Part shown: positions 44,606 to 63,844 of the stretch, piece after piece
How positions within the stretch are numbered: position 1 is the first letter of the stretch
Layout of the letters: every line of letters starts with the position of its first letter
DNA from: Sminthopsis crassicaudata
Taxonomy: Eukaryota
Assembly (NCBI RefSeq): GCF_048593235.1
Contig: NC_133619.1
Location: 582,979,963 to 583,043,962, forward strand
Length of the DNA: 64,000 nt
Direction of reading: 5' to 3'
Notes under the pieces: generated by a model
The model's database searches: none
Told to the model about the DNA's origin: nothing
What the model saw: the letters and a program-made list of their open reading frames with translations, nothing else
Made by a program: the position numbers and the translations under genes

Positions 44606-45565
44606 CTAGCCCCAGGTGGAGTGAATCCTGGAAGGGACAACTAGACGGATTATCCCTGTGCGAATCTGCTTGGTCTTCACACTGTAAATTATGGGATTGA
44701 GCACAGGAGGCACCAACAAGTAAATGTGAGCCATGAAAATGTGGACAAGGGGAGGGGCATGCTTTGCAAAACGGTGGACAAGAGACAGACCAATCATGGG
44801 CACATAGAGGATGAGGACAGCACAGATGTGGGAGGCACATGTGTTGAGAGCTTTGAGCCTTTCCTTCTGTGATGCAATGCTCAGCACAGAACGGAGAATG
44901 AAGATATAAGAAACCAGAATGCCCAGGGAATCAAATCCCCATAGAATAATGATCAAAACCAATCCATAGATGACATTAAACTTAATATCAGCACAAGCCA
45001 AGCGAATCATGTCCTGATGTAGACAGTAGGAATGAGAAAGGACATGGGAGCGACAAAAAGGGAAGTATGCAAGACGGATCATCAGGGGAATAATGGAAAG
45101 GGAACTCCTGAGAAAAGCTGCTATTCCAATCTTGGTTATGCGCTGTGGGGTAAGGATGGTGGAATACCTCAGGGGGTGGCAGATTGCTACATAGCGGTCA
45201 AAGGCCATTGCCAGGAGTACAGCTGATTCTGTGAAGGAGAAAGTATGGATGAAGAACATCTGTATCACACAAGTGTTGAATTCAATCTCTCTGGAGATGG
45301 ACCACAAGACTCGGAAGAGTGATACAAGAGTGGGAAGGGACATGCCCATATCAGTGAGAGACAACATGGCCAAGAAATAGTACATGGGTTCATGGAGGCT
45401 TGGGTCAGTTCTGACTATATGAAGGATGGTACAGTTGCCCACTATCCCAATCAGGTAGAAGATGCAGAAAGGGATGGAGATCCAGTGGTGTAGTGCCTCA
45501 TAACCAGGAATCCCAATGAAGTAGAATGTGGTAGATAGGTCACTACTGATATTAAAGTCTGCCAT
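44606..45565 (-). CDS. Class I olfactory receptor, OR51 family, copy B, intact (319 aa)
   Basis: NIS sequon, GIPGYE, LHEPMYYFL, MAFDRYVAIC, SHSYCLHQD, KALNTCASH, HRFAKH, PPVLNPIIYSVKT. Confidence 0.96.
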   Translation of the reverse strand: MADFNISSDLSTTFYFIGIPGYEALHHWISIPFCIFYLIGIVGNCTILHIVRTDPSLHEPMYYFLAMLSLTDMGMSLPTLVSLFRVLWSISREIEFNTCVIQMFFIHTFSFTESAVLLAMAFDRYVAICHPLRYSTILTPQRITKIGIAAFLRSSLSIIPLMIRLAYFPFCRSHVLSHSYCLHQDMIRLACADIKFNVIYGLVLIIILWGFDSLGILVSYIFILRSVLSIASQKERLKALNTCASHICAVLILYVPMIGLSLVHRFAKHAPPLVHIFMAHIYLLVPPVLNPIIYSVKTKQIRTGIIRLVVPSRIHSTWG

Positions 45566-45613
45566 GGAGCTTCTGGAAAGAGCTGCAATCCCATGTCATA
45601 CATGTAATTACTC

Positions 45614-45640
45614 CTACAAGGAAATGAAAAACACAAAATG
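45614..45640 (-). promoter_or_regulatory. Predicted 3' splice site of the OR51 copy B coding exon
   Basis: Minus strand ttttgtgtttttcatttccttgtAG|gagtaat, 48 nt upstream of the ATG; the same motif is conserved in copy C at 62072-62100. Confidence 0.65.
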
Positions 45641-45648
45641 GCTGCAAA

Positions 45649-46479
45649 GTATACTTTAATATGAATTTGGTTGCTCTAATTTCCTGTTTTCTATTTAACC
45701 ACTGCTATTTTTACCCCTCTATTTTCTCTTTGTCCTTATTTCCTCCAAACTTTTCTACTGATATTTTGGAGTTACAAAGTTTGCTAAATGGTTTATTTTA
45801 TCCTTAAACAGCTGATAAGAGCAATTATAAGCTTTTTGATCCCATTATAAATTCCTTTAATATAGAAAGCTGTTTGAATTTTTTTTTGCCTTATTTGTAG
45901 TTCTGCATGAATAAGAAACAACCTGTTGTTTAAGGATTAAATTTGTTTAAAGTTTAATTCAAGAAGTTTAGATTATGCTGCCACAAAGTCTTGCAGGAAC
46001 ATGAAGATTGATACAAGGAATAGAAGTTTCCCCCTGTTGTGACTCACTAGGAAAGTCCTTCTGCAGAAAGTGTGACAATTAGAACAATTAGAGAAACTGA
46101 GGAAGGACAATTAGGGAAACTGAGTCAGAACAATTTAGGCAAACTGAGGTATACTTTAATATGAATTTGGTTGCTCTGATTTCCTGTTTTCTATTTAACC
46201 ACTGCTATATTTACCCCTCTATTTTCTCTTTGTCCTTATTTCCTCCAAACTTTTCTACTGATATTTTGGAGTTACAAAGTTTGCTAAATGGTTTATTTTA
46301 TCCTTAAACAGCTGATAAGAGCAATTATAAGCTTTTTGATCCCATTATAAATTCCTTTAATATAGAAAGCTGTTTGAATTTTTTTTTGCCTTATTTGTAG
46401 TTCTGCATGAATAAGAAACAAAACCTGTTGTTTAAGGATTAAATTTGTTTAAAGTTTAATTCAAGAAGTTTAGATTATG
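45649..46479. repeat. Near-identical direct repeat, 329/331 bp, with a 171-bp spacer
   Basis: 45649-45977 vs 46149-46479; two substitutions and one 2-bp indel. Confidence 0.95.
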
Positions 46480-58721: not shown

Positions 58722-59675
58722 CTAGGTAGAACGAATTCTTGTGGGGACAAATAGACGGATTATCCCTGTGCGAATCTGCTTGGTCTTTACACTATAGATT
58801 AGAGGATTGAGCACAGGAGGCACCAGCAAGTAGATGTGAGCCATGAAAATGTGGACAAGGGGAGAGGCATGCTTTGCAAAACGGTGGACAAGAGACAGAC
58901 CAATCATGGGCACATAGAGGATGAGGACAGCACAGATGTGGGAGGCACATGTGTTGAGAGCTTTGAGCCTTTCCTTCCGTGATGCAATGCTTAGCACAGA
59001 ACGGAGAATGAAGATATAAGAAATCAGAATGCCCAGGGAATCAAATCCCCATAGAATGATAACTAAAACCAACCCATAGATGACATTAAACTTAATATCA
59101 GCACAAGCCAAGCGAATCAAGTCCTGATGTAGGCAGTAAGAATGAGAAAGGACATGGGAGCGACAAAAAGGAAAGTATGCAAGACGGATCATCAGTGGAA
59201 TAATGGGTAGTGAACTCCTGAGAAAAGCTGCTATTCCAATCTTGCCAATGCGCTGTGGAGTGAGGATGGTGGAATACCTCAAGGGGTGACAGATTGCTAC
59301 ATAGCGGTCAAAGGCCATTGCCAGGAGCACTGCTGATTCTGTGTTGGAGAAAGTATGGATGAAGAACATCTGTATCACACAAGTGTTGAATTCAATCTTC
59401 CTGGAGATGGACCACAGCACTCTGAAGAGTGATATAAGAGTGGGAAAGGACATGCCCATATCAGTGAGAGACAACATGGCCAAGAAATAATACATGGGTT
59501 CATGAAGACTTGGGTCAGTCCTGACTATATGAAGGATAATACAGTTGCCCACTATCCCAATCAGGTAGAAGATGCAGAAAGGGATGGAGATCCAGTGATG
59601 TAGTGCCTCATATCCAGGAATTCCAATGAAGTAGAATGTGGTAGATAGGTCACTACTGGTATTGAAGTCTGCCAT
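58722..59675 (-). CDS. Class I olfactory receptor, OR51 family, copy C, intact ORF (317 aa); expression possibly impaired by the upstream L1
   Basis: Same motifs as copy B; ends two codons earlier (TGG in B vs TAG). Confidence 0.93.
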   Translation of the reverse strand: MADFNTSSDLSTTFYFIGIPGYEALHHWISIPFCIFYLIGIVGNCIILHIVRTDPSLHEPMYYFLAMLSLTDMGMSFPTLISLFRVLWSISRKIEFNTCVIQMFFIHTFSNTESAVLLAMAFDRYVAICHPLRYSTILTPQRIGKIGIAAFLRSSLPIIPLMIRLAYFPFCRSHVLSHSYCLHQDLIRLACADIKFNVIYGLVLVIILWGFDSLGILISYIFILRSVLSIASRKERLKALNTCASHICAVLILYVPMIGLSLVHRFAKHASPLVHIFMAHIYLLVPPVLNPLIYSVKTKQIRTGIIRLFVPTRIRST

Positions 59676-59724
59676 GGAGTTTCTGTAAAGAGCTGCAATC
59701 CCATGTCACACACACAATTACTTC

Positions 59725-62058
59725 TTTTTTTATAGATTTTTATTTACAAGATATATGCATGGGTAATTTTTCAGCATTGACAATTGCAAAACCTTTTGTT
59801 CCAACTTTTCCCCTCCTTCTCCCCATGCCCTCCCCCAGATGGCAGGTTGACCATTACATGCTAAATATATTAAAGTATAAATTCAATTCAATATATGTTT
59901 ACATGTCCAAACAGTTATTTTGCTGTATAAAAAGAATTGGACTTTGAAATAGTGTACAATTAATCTGTGAAGCAAATAAAAAATGCAGGTGGGCAAAATA
60001 GAGGGATTGGGAATTCTATGTAGTGGTTCATAGTCATTTCCCAGAGTTCTTTTGCTGGGTGTAGCTGGTTCAATTCATTACTGCTCTATTGGAACTGATT
60101 TGATTCATCTCATTGTTGAAGATGGCCACATCCATCGGAATTGATCATCATATATTATTGTTGTTGAAGTATATAATGATCTCTTGGTCCTGCTCATTTC
60201 ACTCAGCATCAGTTCATGTAAGTCACTCCAGGCCTTTCTGAAATCATCCTGCTGGTCATTTCTTACAGAACAATAATATTCCATAATATTCATATATCAC
60301 AATTTATTCAGCCATTCTCCAATTGATGGGCATCCACTCAGTTTCCAATTTCTGGCCAGTACAAAGAGGGCTGCCAAAAACATTCTTGCACATGTTGGTT
60401 CCCTTTCCTTTCTTTAAGATCTTTTTGGGATATAAGCCCAGTAGTAACACTGCTGGGTCAAAGGATATGCACAGAGTGATAACTTTTTGAGCATAGTTCC
60501 AAATCATTCTCCAGAATGGCTGGATGTATTCACAATTCCACCAGCAATGTATCAGTGTCCCTGTTTTCCCACATCCCCTCCGACATTGTACATTATATCT
60601 CCCTATCATTCTAGCTAATCTGACAGGTGTGTAGTGGTATCTCAGAGTTGTCTTAATTTGCATTTCTCTGATTAATGATGAGTTGGAGCATCTTTTCATA
60701 TGGCTAGAAATAGTTTCAATTTCTTCATCTGAGAATTGTCTGTTCATATCCTTTGACCATTTATCAATTGGAGAATGGCTTGATTTCTTATAAATTAGAG
60801 TAAATTCTCTATATATTTTGGAAATGAGGCCTTTATTAGAACCTTTGATTGTAAAAATGTTTTCTCAGTTTATTGCTTTCCTTCTAATCTTGTCTGCATT
60901 AGTTTTGTTTGTACAAAAACTTTTCAATTAGACAAAGTCAAAATTTTCTCTTTTGAAATCAATAATGATCTCTATTTCTTCTTTGGTCATAAATTCCTTC
61001 CTCTTCCAGAGGTGTGAGAGATAAACTATCCTATGTTTCTCTAATTTATTTAAATCTCATTCTTTATGCCTATGTCATGAACCCATTTTGACCTTATCTT
61101 GGTGTATGGTATTAAATGTGGGTCAATGCTTAGTTTCTGCCATACTAATTTCCAATTTTTCCCAGAAATTTTTGTCAAACAGTGAGTTCTTATCCCCAAA
61201 TCTGAGGTCTTTGGGTTTGTCAAACACTTGATTATTAAAGTGATTGTTTTGTCCTTTGAACCTAACCTATTACATTGATCAAGTGGTCTATTTCTTAGCC
61301 AATATCAAATGGTTTTGGTAACTGCTGCTTTACAATATAATTTTAAATCTGGTACAGCTAGGACACTTTTATTTGATTTTTTTTATTAATTACCCTGAAA
61401 TTCTTGACCTTTTGTTTTTCCATATGAACTTTGTTGTCATTTTTTTCTAGGTCATTAAAATAATTTTTGGGAGTCTGATTGGTATATTGCTAAATAAATA
61501 GATTAGTTTAAGTAGTTTTGTCATCTTTATTAAATTTGCTCGCCCTATCCAAGAGCATTTAATATTTTTTCCAATTGGTTAGATCAGACTTAATTTGTGT
61601 GGAAAGTGTTTTGTAGTTTTGCTCATATAGTTTCTGATTTTCCCTTGGCAGATAGATTCCTAAATATTTTATACTATTGGTACTTACTTTAAATGAAATT
61701 CCTCTTTGTAGCTCTAACTGTTAGATTTTGTTAGTGACATGTAAGAATACTGATGATTTATGTGGATTTATTTTGTATCCTGCAACTATGCTAAAGGTGT
61801 GGATTATTTCTAATAGCTTTTTAGTAGAATCTCTGGGGTTCTCTAAGTATATGATCACATCATCAACAAAGAGTGGTAATTTGGTTTCCTCAATACCTAC
61901 TCTAATTCCTTTAATCTTTCTCAACTCTTATTGCCAAAGCTAGCATTTCTAATAAAGTATTGAATAGTAATGGTGATAGTGGGCAACTTTGTTTCACTCC
62001 TGATCTTATTGGGAATGGTTGCAGTTTATCCCCATTACATATGATGCTTACTGATGGT
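59725..62058 (-). mobile_element. 5'-truncated L1 (2.33 kb) with 14-bp TSD
   Basis: cacacaatta[c/t]ttc at 59711-59724 and 62059-62072; T run at 59725; AATAAA on the minus strand at 59744-59739; ORF2 pieces 61721-61924 (LFVDDV) and 60304-60747. Confidence 0.95.
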
Positions 62059-63844
62059 CACACAATTATTTCTACAAAGAAATGAAAGACACAAAATGAC
62101 TTCTTCACTATTGCACTCCTCTATTTTCTCTTTGTGCATATTTACTGTCTACTTTTCTACTGATATTTTGGAGATACAGAGCTTGATAAATGATCTATTT
62201 TATTCCTAAACAGCTGGGAACAGCAATGATAAGCTTTTAGGTCTCTTTTTAAATACTTTTATTTATTTTTCTAACTTTATTTAAAAATAAACACTTATTT
62301 AAGTATTTAATATTCAATAACAAATATTTAATTACATAATTAAAAACAACTTAAATATTTAAATAAATAATTGAAAATTTTAAGAAATCATTTATTCAAA
62401 CATTTCTATTTGAATAAATGCTTTGCCCTATTTATCCTTCTGCATGATTGAGAAATGACTTGTTTAAAAAATAAATTAGTTTAAAGCTTAACTCAAGGAA
62501 AAAAAAAACTTTTGATTAATCATGTTGTATCTTTTCTCTTTCCTCTTCTACCCATAGTTTTCTGGCCAATATTCCTCAAATAAAAATCTGTTTATCTATG
62601 CAACTATTCAAGATGCTGTTTCTTCTAGAATAAAACACAGACTCTTAATTTTGGCTTTCCCTTTACAATAGTTCTGTATTTCCTGACTATTTTTCCTGAC
62701 TTATTATGCATTTCTCCTAGTCATGCATTTATTTGATTCATCCTAACTGACCTAATTATACATGGCATGGTTGTCTCTTACTCAAGGCATTCTTTCTTTG
62801 TGCTTGTACAAAAAGTGATCTCTATGTGTGAAATACATTTCTCTTTCCTCTCTACTTTTATTTCCTAATTTCCTTCCAATCTCAGATCATACCATGACTT
62901 CTATTTTGGTCTTTTCTTGTTTCCTTGCTAACTAGTGCTGACCTCTCATTTCCTTCAATTTTCTGTTTATTTACTTTGTTTAATTTCATATACATATTTA
63001 TGTACTTCCTTGAGAAAATGTAATTTACTTTAAGGCAGAATTAATTTCATTTTATCCTATTTAAAATGTCTATGATATTAAAATGTGTTGGTTGTTTAAA
63101 TAAATTTATGAGAGCATATCAGTTTTTCAGAGGCTTCCCAGTTCTTTGATATATTTAGATAAATCATTGACAACTTTCTACCAGTAACAGAATCAATAGT
63201 CATGATCACATCTCCACGTGGACTCAGGACAGACCCCCTCATCATAGACATTATTGAGCTTGCAAAACAAATCTCAGCCTCTTACTAAAAAGTATTTGAC
63301 CCTGATTTATATTTTCTGATATAACTAATTTTTCTATGCAAAATCCTTCTTTTGACAGAATCTTTCCTTTGTCCCTTTCATTCTTAGTTGAGATGATACC
63401 CTCTACATTGCACAAAATGACATCAACTGTAAAATTAAAAAAACACACAATAACACCCAAGCTTAATCACAAAGATATTGCTATTACAGTTTTTTTAATC
63501 TTGTATTTAAAAAAAAGTTTCTTAGGTTTTGAAATTTTCTTTTAATTAAATCAACATTTCAAGAAATCCCAGCTACCCTCCTTTACAAAATGAACAATTG
63601 CTTGAACCACAGAATGACACCTGAGCTAAATTCAATATGGCAATAGACCGTTTTTATAAAATGCTCAATATTTTCATCTTGCTTGACTTTAAGACTCACC
63701 ACTAATGTCCCACTTTCTGTAGATTTACTTTCCTAGTGCTTTTCATATGCCTTCCTCATTGCAATTTCCATTTACTCTGCATATATCTTGGATATACCTA
63801 GTGATTTATATGCAATTATGTATTTATTTGTAGTTATTATATTT

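What the first reader, a model, noticed from the sequence alone, without database searches (positions are those of the whole stretch)
59675..62100. Sense L1 inserted exactly at the splice acceptor of an intact OR51 gene
Seen: copy B has the acceptor ...catttccttgtAG| 48 nt upstream of its ATG. In copy C the homologous tract ...catttctttgtAG| sits at 62073-62072, and its G is the first base of a 14-bp TSD flanking a 2.33-kb L1 in the same orientation as the gene. The L1 AATAAA (59744-59739) and A tail now lie about 65 and 50 nt upstream of the OR ATG. The AG recreated at 59725-59724 (A tail plus TSD) has no pyrimidine tract. The L1 3'UTR offers a cryptic acceptor, ttttttatttgcttcacAG (59966-59965). 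Established: sense L1 insertions can cause premature polyadenylation, and L1 poly(A) signals are often leaky. Inference: copy C may be a cryptic null, intact in ORF-based OR counts but not translated, or it may have been rescued by L1-derived splicing.
Basis: partly seen in the sequence, partly recalled or inferred. Interest (0 to 1): 0.72.

Follow-up and report, generated by a model that had tools for sequence, protein, structure and literature searches.

The report
Old L1 at smell-receptor splice site
A 2.3-kb L1 jumping gene really did land on the predicted splice site just upstream of a dunnart smell-receptor gene, but it landed long ago and the gene has stayed under strong selection since, so it is probably a tolerated insertion and not a hidden dead gene.

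Summary
A 5'-truncated, sense-oriented L1 (62058-59725, minus strand, 2334 bp) is flanked by a 14-bp target-site duplication matching at 13 of 14 bases. It sits at the best predicted 3' splice site of an intact OR51-like gene, copy C (58722-59675). Paralogue copy B keeps the empty site.

The "cryptic null" reading is disfavoured.
- The L1 is old. It carries 5-8% private substitutions and five private frameshifting indels, against a B/C per-lineage dS of about 0.107.
- Copy C has an Antechinus orthologue of the same 317-aa length, so the B/C duplication predates crown Dasyuridae (about 21-29 Ma).
- B versus C gives dN/dS = 0.12. Copy C's private changes are 5 non-synonymous to 12 synonymous. 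A dead paralogue in the same window (copy A) shows 24 to 8.
- If copy C had drifted neutrally since the insertion, an intact ORF would be expected in under 2% of cases.

So the gene has very probably stayed functional. How its mRNA gets past the L1 could not be tested. It could use a weak acceptor 7 nt before the ATG, or L1-derived acceptors at 59966 and 59924. This is a well-documented but fairly ordinary tolerated insertion in a hazardous position.

The parts
58722..59675 (-). Copy C: intact 317-aa class I (OR51-like) olfactory receptor ORF including stop
   Evidence: ORF list. Pfam 7tm_4 covers 1-278 of 280 profile positions at 376.8 bits. The exact protein is held by NCBI and UniRef.
59676..59710 (-). 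Native proximal leader between the 3' TSD and the ATG. It holds the AGs at 59694 and 59684 and an upstream ATG at -29.
   Evidence: 31 of 33 bases match copy B, against about 81% identity in the flanks. Binomial P = 0.036.
59683..59684 (-). Proximal AG 7 nt before the ATG. It is a weak candidate acceptor lying downstream of the L1 poly(A) signal.
   Evidence: Score 1.4, and 1.6 at the same site in copy B. The leader it would give has no upstream ATG.
59711..59724 (-). 3' copy of the target-site duplication
   Evidence: Read directly. It matches the 5' copy at 13 of 14 bases.
59708..59718 (-). GU-rich run just downstream of the L1 poly(A) signal. It could serve as a downstream element for cleavage.
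   Evidence: Read directly. The functional reading is inference.
59725..62058 (-). 5'-truncated L1 in the same orientation as the gene: 3' part of the RT domain, the rest of ORF2, the 3' UTR and a short A run
   Evidence: Homologous to six or more other L1 fragments in the window at 64-86% identity. RVT_1 match on 61724-61924, E = 1.5e-6. 43 or more stops in every frame.
59739..59744 (-). L1 terminal AATAAA
   Evidence: Conserved at the 3' end of other copies of the family.
59965..59983 (-). Acceptor-like site in the L1 3' UTR (pyrimidine tract plus AG at 59966-59965)
   Evidence: Score 8.2, equal to the native acceptor. It is present in other copies, so it is a family feature and not a change specific to copy C.
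59923..59924 (-). Second acceptor-like AG in the L1 3' UTR
   Evidence: Score 5.7. Also a family feature.
61682..61690 (-). Best donor-like site inside the L1 (GT at 61687, core GTAAGT)
   Evidence: Score 5.4, the highest between 62200 and 59676. Any use of it is inference.
62059..62072 (-). 5' copy of the target-site duplication
62072..62098 (-). Predicted native 3' splice site of copy C (pyrimidine tract plus AG at 62073-62072), now separated from the coding exon
   Evidence: Score 8.2. 25 of 27 bases match the copy B site.
45566..45640 (-). Copy B empty site: the same acceptor tract and a 48-nt leader without the L1
   Evidence: score 9.1, exon start 48 nt before the ATG.
34529..35194 (-). 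Copy A: 5'-truncated dead paralogue (aa 96-317), used as an internal neutral control
   Evidence: tblastn at 87% identity. Private changes are 24 non-synonymous to 8 synonymous, and DRY has become DHY.

Best explanation
An old, fixed, 5'-truncated L1 inserted by ordinary target-primed reverse transcription. It landed on the pyrimidine-tract/AG boundary that is the best predicted 3' splice site of OR51-like copy C in the fat-tailed dunnart.

The gene was not killed. It has stayed under purifying selection for most or all of the time since, so it must still yield a translatable mRNA.

My preferred route is inferred, not shown. The L1 now lies wholly inside an enlarged 5'-UTR intron. Productive transcripts join the upstream non-coding exon to an acceptor downstream of the L1 poly(A) signal. 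The best candidate is the weak AG 7 nt before the ATG (59684-59683), which is conserved in copy B and would give a short leader free of upstream ATGs. The old acceptor at 62073 and the L1's own acceptor-like and poly(A) sites then act as decoys. They would lower output without abolishing it.

I put about 0.8 on 'still functional, insertion tolerated' and about 0.45 on this particular route. The confidence value given is for the route.
For: Insertion is real and lies after the B/C duplication:
- TSD plus an empty site in copy B.

The L1 is old:
- Three-point K80 private branch of 0.04-0.13, mostly 0.07-0.11.
- Parsimony-private substitutions of 5.1-7.8%, and five private frameshifting indels in the ORF2 part.
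- Its indel-to-substitution ratio is 0.071. That matches the neutral ratio of the B/C flanks (0.063-0.09), so the private changes are post-insertion decay.

Scale:
- dS(B,C) = 0.215, or about 0.107 per lineage. Flank identity is about 81%.

Constraint on copy C:
- dN/dS(B,C) = 0.12.
- Copy C's private changes are 5 non-synonymous to 12 synonymous, against 24 to 8 in dead copy A. Fisher P = 0.005.
- Only 7 amino-acid changes are private to the dunnart copy C since its split from Antechinus P0124. The two share six derived residues and the 317-aa end.
- Neutral simulation gives P(ORF intact) below about 2% for t of 0.04 or more, and P(14 or fewer aa changes) = 0.0045 at t = 0.04. Poisson P(5 or fewer non-synonymous changes in 509 sites) = 5.5e-5 at t = 0.04.

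For the route:
- Only the AGs at 59694 and 59684 lie downstream of the L1 AATAAA and also avoid the -29 upstream ATG.
- The 33 nt before the ATG match copy B at 31 of 33 bases.
- Devil models P0132 and P0133 start with a translation of the same 21 nt as in copy B.
- OR genes commonly use several alternatively spliced 5'-UTR exons (PMC7055050).
Against: - No transcript evidence at all.
- The -7 acceptor is weak (1.4) next to the old acceptor and the L1 acceptor (8.2 each), and it has an AG 10 nt upstream.
- My splice matrix is approximate and written from memory.
- The L1 age rests on a handful of copies from one window. Part of the private branch could be evolution of the source lineage.
- Selection is measured over the whole copy C lineage, so a recent loss of expression cannot be excluded.
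- One 113-nt stretch is identical between B and C (P = 0.025). It could be a small gene-conversion tract.
Confidence: 0.45

Rival explanations
1. Rescue by L1-derived splicing. The upstream exon joins the strong acceptor-like site in the L1 3' UTR (59966, or 59924), either directly or after a short L1 exon that uses the old acceptor and the donor at 61687. The mRNA then reads through the L1 poly(A) signal to reach the ATG.
For: The 59966 site scores 8.2, equal to the native acceptor, and 59924 scores 5.7. A strong GTAAGT donor at 61687 could define a 385-nt L1 exon with the old acceptor. OR mRNAs tolerate many upstream ORFs: 67-86% of mouse OR genes have them.
Against: The resulting leader of 247-289 nt carries 7 upstream ATGs, three of them in strong context. 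It also holds AATAAA followed by a GU-rich run, which looks like an efficient cleavage site 50-65 nt before the ATG. Both acceptors are family features with no change specific to copy C that would suggest exaptation.
Confidence: 0.25
2. Cryptic null. The L1 cut the coding exon off from its acceptor and imposed premature polyadenylation. On this view copy C is transcriptionally or translationally dead despite its intact ORF.
For: The best predicted acceptor is separated from the exon by 2.3 kb of sense L1 carrying 11 poly(A) hexamers. Sense LINEs next to acceptors lie in the zone where LINEs are depleted and where mutagenic insertions cluster (PMC3088655).
Against: The L1 carries about 0.06-0.09 substitutions per site of decay, yet the ORF is intact. 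Copy C's private changes are 5 non-synonymous to 12 synonymous, against 24 to 8 in the dead paralogue. Neutral survival of the ORF over that span is under 2%. The Antechinus orthologue is also intact.
Confidence: 0.07
3. A new transcription start. Copy C is now transcribed from a start site inside the L1 3' end or in the 50 nt after it, so splicing past the L1 is not needed.
For: Nothing direct. It would explain continued function without use of a weak acceptor. No conserved upstream exon was found in the 1.9 kb of window upstream, and B/C homology there is at the neutral level.
Against: A 5'-truncated L1 has no sense promoter. No promoter feature was tested or seen. The window ends 1.9 kb upstream, so a native upstream exon may simply lie outside it.
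Confidence: 0.1
4. The old acceptor is still used and the whole L1 is carried as a 2.4-kb 5' UTR.
For: The acceptor at 62073 is intact and strong.
Against: That leader would hold 58 upstream ATGs and 11 poly(A) hexamers. This is hard to reconcile with the purifying selection seen on the ORF.
Confidence: 0.03

Closest known systems
Fixed intronic L1 insertions in the 'underrepresentation zone' next to splice acceptors (Zhang, Romanish and Mager 2011, PMC3088655)
   Same: A sense-oriented LINE directly beside a 3' splice site. This is the position and orientation in which LINEs are depleted and in which most mutagenic L1 insertions are found.
   Different: This one is old and fixed, and the host gene remains under purifying selection. 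It lies in a 5'-UTR intron of a gene family whose leaders are naturally variable, not between coding exons.
L1-mediated transcript attenuation, cryptic polyadenylation and exonization (for example Kaer et al. 2011, PMC3192792; Han, Szak and Boeke 2004 and Perepelitsa-Belancio and Deininger 2003, the last two from my own knowledge)
   Same: An A-rich sense L1 with many internal poly(A) hexamers plus acceptor-like and donor-like sites.
   Different: No transcript data here. The effects are inferred from sequence only.
Typical mammalian OR gene structure (Barnes et al. 2020, PMC7055050)
   Same: A single coding exon preceded by a predicted acceptor 40-50 nt before the ATG, seen in all four intact ORs of the window. 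Upstream ATGs in the leader are common in the family.
   Different: In copy C the predicted acceptor is displaced 2.35 kb from the exon.

Membership tests
Class I olfactory receptor (OR51/52-like, Pfam 7tm_4) | Full-length match to the olfactory-receptor 7TM profile | tested here: met
   7tm_4 covers 1-278 of 280 positions at 376.8 bits, E = 1.1e-112. The nearest named relatives are OR51L1-like and OR51G2-like.
Class I olfactory receptor (OR51/52-like, Pfam 7tm_4) | Uninterrupted ORF with the conserved DRY-type and NPxxY-type motifs | tested here: met
   A 317-aa ORF. The MAFDRY and NPLIY motifs are present in the alignment. Dead copy A has DHY.
Class I olfactory receptor (OR51/52-like, Pfam 7tm_4) | Expression in olfactory sensory neurons | not testable with these tools
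L1 (LINE-1) insertion by target-primed reverse transcription | Reverse transcriptase coding remnant in the stated orientation | tested here: met
   RVT_1 E = 1.5e-6 at 28.5 bits, just under the 29.6-bit cut-off, on a 67-aa stop-free piece of the minus strand. There are several homologous L1 fragments in the window.
L1 (LINE-1) insertion by target-primed reverse transcription | 3' poly(A) signal and A tail, 5' truncation, flanking target-site duplication | tested here: met
   AATAAA at 59744-59739, an A run of 7, and a TSD matching at 13 of 14 bases. The element starts inside the RT domain.
L1 (LINE-1) insertion by target-primed reverse transcription | Empty site in a homologous sequence | tested here: met
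   Copy B carries one copy of the TSD-homologous tract and no L1.
Regulatory (cryptic) pseudogene | Relaxed constraint on the ORF after the disabling event | tested here: not met
   Copy C's private changes are 5 non-synonymous to 12 synonymous, against 24 to 8 in dead copy A. dN/dS(B,C) = 0.12. The ORF is intact despite an L1 age of about 0.06-0.09.
TE exonization or TE-derived splice site in a host mRNA | Transcripts containing a junction at the TE-derived site | not testable with these tools
   No reads could be laid. Only sequence scores exist.

The most novel reading that the evidence does not exclude
The L1 has been co-opted. Its 3'-UTR acceptor now supplies the first base of the coding exon, and its poly(A) signal, backed by the GU-rich target sequence, acts as a built-in attenuator. 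That arrangement would have been kept for more than about 12 million years and would set the expression level or choice frequency of this receptor. It may be shared with Antechinus.
Probability: 0.2. Interest if true: 0.5.

Novelty: new member of a known kind. Interest (0 to 1): 0.3.

Why it matters
OR repertoires are usually counted by ORF intactness alone, so regulatory nulls would inflate functional counts. This case shows how to test that worry from sequence alone: date the insertion, then ask whether the ORF drifted afterwards. Here the answer is that the gene did not drift.

It also gives a clean natural example of a sense L1 in the most hazardous intronic position that a gene has tolerated for many millions of years. 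That makes copies B and C a matched pair, with and without the L1, for measuring what such an insertion does to splicing and polyadenylation in olfactory neurons.

Tried and rejected
- **Orthologous loci.** The other collections hold no marsupial genomes.
- **Reads.** The look-up of sequencing runs listed 23 runs. So there are no junctions, no 3' ends and no polymorphism data.
- **Earlier notes.** Notes of this scan held nothing near the locus.
- **Exaptation signs.** I looked for changes specific to copy C that strengthen the L1 acceptors or weaken the poly(A) signal. There are none; these sites are family features.
- **Upstream exon or promoter.** I looked for one conserved between B and C in the 1.9 kb upstream. 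Homology reaches only to 62497, at neutral-level identity.
- **Gene conversion.** I considered whether conversion from copy B keeps the ORF intact. Differences are spread along the CDS with dS = 0.215 and only one 113-nt identical run, so I rejected it as the main explanation.
- **Literature.** One search for OR acceptor positions returned nothing useful.
Full report
**Identity of the locus**

The window carries four intact class I olfactory receptor ORFs, and all four are full-length matches to Pfam 7tm_4. Copy C (58722-59675, minus strand, 317 aa) and copy B (44606-45565, minus strand, 319 aa) are 95% identical in protein. Their nearest named relatives are marsupial OR51L1-like and OR51G2-like proteins. 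Copy B shares its contig length with a Sminthopsis crassicaudata entry. The exact copy C protein is present in NCBI and UniRef, so it is annotated as coding.

**Check of the observation**

Read on the minus strand, the layout is:
- a pyrimidine tract ending in AG at 62073-62072;
- 14 bases at 62072-62059;
- 2334 bases (62058-59725) that end in AATAAA (59744-59739) and a 7-nt A run;
- the same 14 bases again at 59724-59711, with one mismatch;
- 35 more bases, then the ATG at 59675.

The inserted block is homologous from its first base to its last with other L1 fragments in the window, at 64-86% identity. A stop-free piece of it hits RVT_1 with E = 1.5e-6. It has more than 40 stops in every frame.

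Copy B has the same upstream sequence without the block, and the alignment runs straight across the insertion point. The A of the AG may belong to the duplication, so the exact nick position is ambiguous by one or two bases. The target reads as a degenerate L1 endonuclease site (my own knowledge of the TT/AAAA preference).

**Is the -48 AG the acceptor?**

This cannot be shown here. With an approximate position matrix written from memory, the -48 site is by far the best acceptor within 300 nt of the ATG in copy B (9.1). It is also the best in copy C once the L1 is left out (8.2). The two more distant ORs of the window have their best sites 40 and 50 nt before the ATG. This fits the published picture of OR genes: a few short non-coding exons spliced onto one long coding exon (PMC7055050).

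**Age of the L1**

No family consensus was built. I used three-taxon comparisons with other copies in the window.
- Three-point K80 estimates of the branch private to this copy range from 0.04 to 0.13, mostly 0.07-0.11.
- Strict parsimony, counting sites where this copy differs and two others agree, gives 5.1-7.8% private substitutions.
- In the ORF2 part there are five private indels, all of them frameshifting.
- The private indel-to-substitution ratio is 0.071. The ratio in the non-coding flanks of B versus C is 0.063-0.09. So these private changes behave as post-insertion decay and not as evolution of an active source element.

I take the age as about 0.06-0.09 substitutions per site. The single mismatch in the TSD and the eroded tail agree with that.

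For scale, dS between B and C is 0.215, about 0.107 per lineage, and their flanks are about 81% identical. The L1 therefore arrived roughly 55-85% of the way back to the B/C duplication.

**Age of the gene lineage**

In a maximum-likelihood tree, copy C is sister to Antechinus flavipes P0124 with 99/97 support, apart from copy B and its Antechinus and devil relatives. Copy C and P0124 share six derived residues and the shortened 317-aa end.

The B/C duplication therefore predates the Sminthopsinae-Dasyurinae split, dated at 20.6-29.3 Ma (PMC5715987). That caps the neutral rate at about 4-5e-9 per site per year. It puts the L1 at not less than roughly 12 Ma, and possibly before the split.

**Did the gene drift after the insertion?**

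No.
- dN/dS between B and C is 0.12.
- A third paralogue, copy A (34529-35194), is 5'-truncated and plainly dead. It has DHY in place of DRY, and its private changes are 24 non-synonymous to 8 synonymous, the neutral 3:1 ratio.
- Over the same 666 nt, copy C has 5 non-synonymous to 12 synonymous and copy B has 8 to 16. Copy C differs from copy A with Fisher P = 0.005.
- Only seven amino-acid changes, mostly conservative, are private to the dunnart copy C since Antechinus.

If copy C had been neutral since an insertion of age 0.04 (my lowest estimate):
- about 20 non-synonymous changes would be expected in those 509 non-synonymous sites, against 5 seen (Poisson P = 5.5e-5);
- about 26 amino-acid changes would be expected over the whole protein (P of 14 or fewer = 0.0045);
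- an intact ORF would survive in under about 2% of cases, and far fewer at 0.06-0.09.

Differences between B and C are spread along the CDS, so wholesale gene conversion does not explain the intact frame. One 113-nt identical run may be a small conversion tract or a strongly constrained segment.

The "cryptic null" reading is thus disfavoured. A recent silencing cannot be excluded.

**How might the mRNA get past the L1?**

This part is inference. Features that make the insertion look dangerous:
- 11 sense poly(A) hexamers;
- a terminal AATAAA followed by a GU-rich run supplied by the target site;
- an acceptor-like site in the L1 3' UTR as strong as the native one (59966), and a second at 59924;
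- a GTAAGT donor at 61687.

Both L1 acceptors occur in other copies of the family, so they are not adaptations specific to copy C. Using them would give a leader of 247-289 nt with seven upstream ATGs, and the poly(A) site would lie inside the last exon. Carrying the whole L1 in the exon would give 58 upstream ATGs.

Only the AGs at 59694 and 59684 lie beyond the poly(A) signal and also drop the strong-context upstream ATG at -29. That ATG opens a 47-codon frame overlapping the start codon.

The -7 AG is weak (1.4). It is conserved in copy B, and the 33 nt before the ATG match at 31 of 33 bases, against about 81% identity nearby (P = 0.036). Two devil protein models begin with a translation of those same 21 nt.

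I therefore prefer a model in which the L1 is simply part of a longer intron and the proximal AG serves productive transcripts, with the old acceptor and the L1 sites draining part of the output. The L1-acceptor route is the main rival. OR leaders are known to be rich in upstream ORFs and in alternative splicing, so either is plausible.

**Comparison with what is known**

Sense LINEs next to acceptors are exactly the class that is depleted in introns and over-represented among disease insertions (PMC3088655). L1s are known to cause intron retention, exonization and cryptic polyadenylation (PMC3192792, listed; I read only its title and abstract). The element fits the dasyurid L1 picture of old, decayed, 5'-truncated copies with 5-15 nt TSDs (PMC4408412). 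What is unusual is survival in that position beside a gene that stayed constrained. This is less surprising in a 5'-UTR intron of an OR gene than it would be between coding exons.

**Limits**

Nothing from those places was sent to a search tool afterwards.
- Splice scores come from my own approximate matrix.

**Verdict**

The null interpretation is disfavoured. A tolerated or rescued insertion is likely, and the route is untested. Interest is modest.

Noticed in passing
window 34529-35194 (-): Copy A is a 5'-truncated paralogue of copies B and C, covering aa 96-317 at 87% identity to copy C. It evolves neutrally (private changes 24 non-synonymous to 8 synonymous, DRY to DHY) and shares N111 and P157 with the copy C lineage. 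What removed its 5' part was not examined.
   Followed up: partly
window 45649-45977 and 46149-46479 (+ coordinates): A near-identical (99-100%) tandem duplication with a 500-bp period lies upstream of copy B. It starts 34 nt upstream of copy B's predicted acceptor AG. It is either very recent or an assembly artefact.
   Followed up: partly
window 59704-59702 (copy C) and 45594-45592 (copy B): An upstream ATG in strong context sits 29 nt before the start codon. It opens a 47-codon out-of-frame ORF that overlaps the main ATG, and it is conserved in both copies. Copy B has two more ATGs just upstream of it.
   Followed up: partly
window 25634-26156 (+) and 26151-27337 (-): Two L1 fragments of the same family abut in opposite orientation and cover overlapping parts of ORF2 (K80 distance 0.127). 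The arrangement looks like a twin-priming inversion or an inverted duplication.
   Followed up: no
copy C CDS nt 698-810 (window about 58978-58866): A 113-nt run is identical between copies B and C although dS is 0.215 overall (P = 0.025). It could be a small gene-conversion tract or synonymous constraint over the TM6 region.
   Followed up: partly
proteins P0132 and P0133 (Sarcophilus, UniRef): These 326-aa models lack a start methionine. They begin with seven residues that translate the 21 nt upstream of the real ATG. This looks like an annotation artefact, and it incidentally shows that the proximal leader is conserved across dasyurid paralogues.
   Followed up: partly
window 62115 vs 45641-45690: Copy C lacks about 49 nt that copy B has, 27-30 nt upstream of the predicted acceptor AG. 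That is where a branch point would be expected. The direction of the change (deletion in C or insertion in B) is unknown.
   Followed up: no
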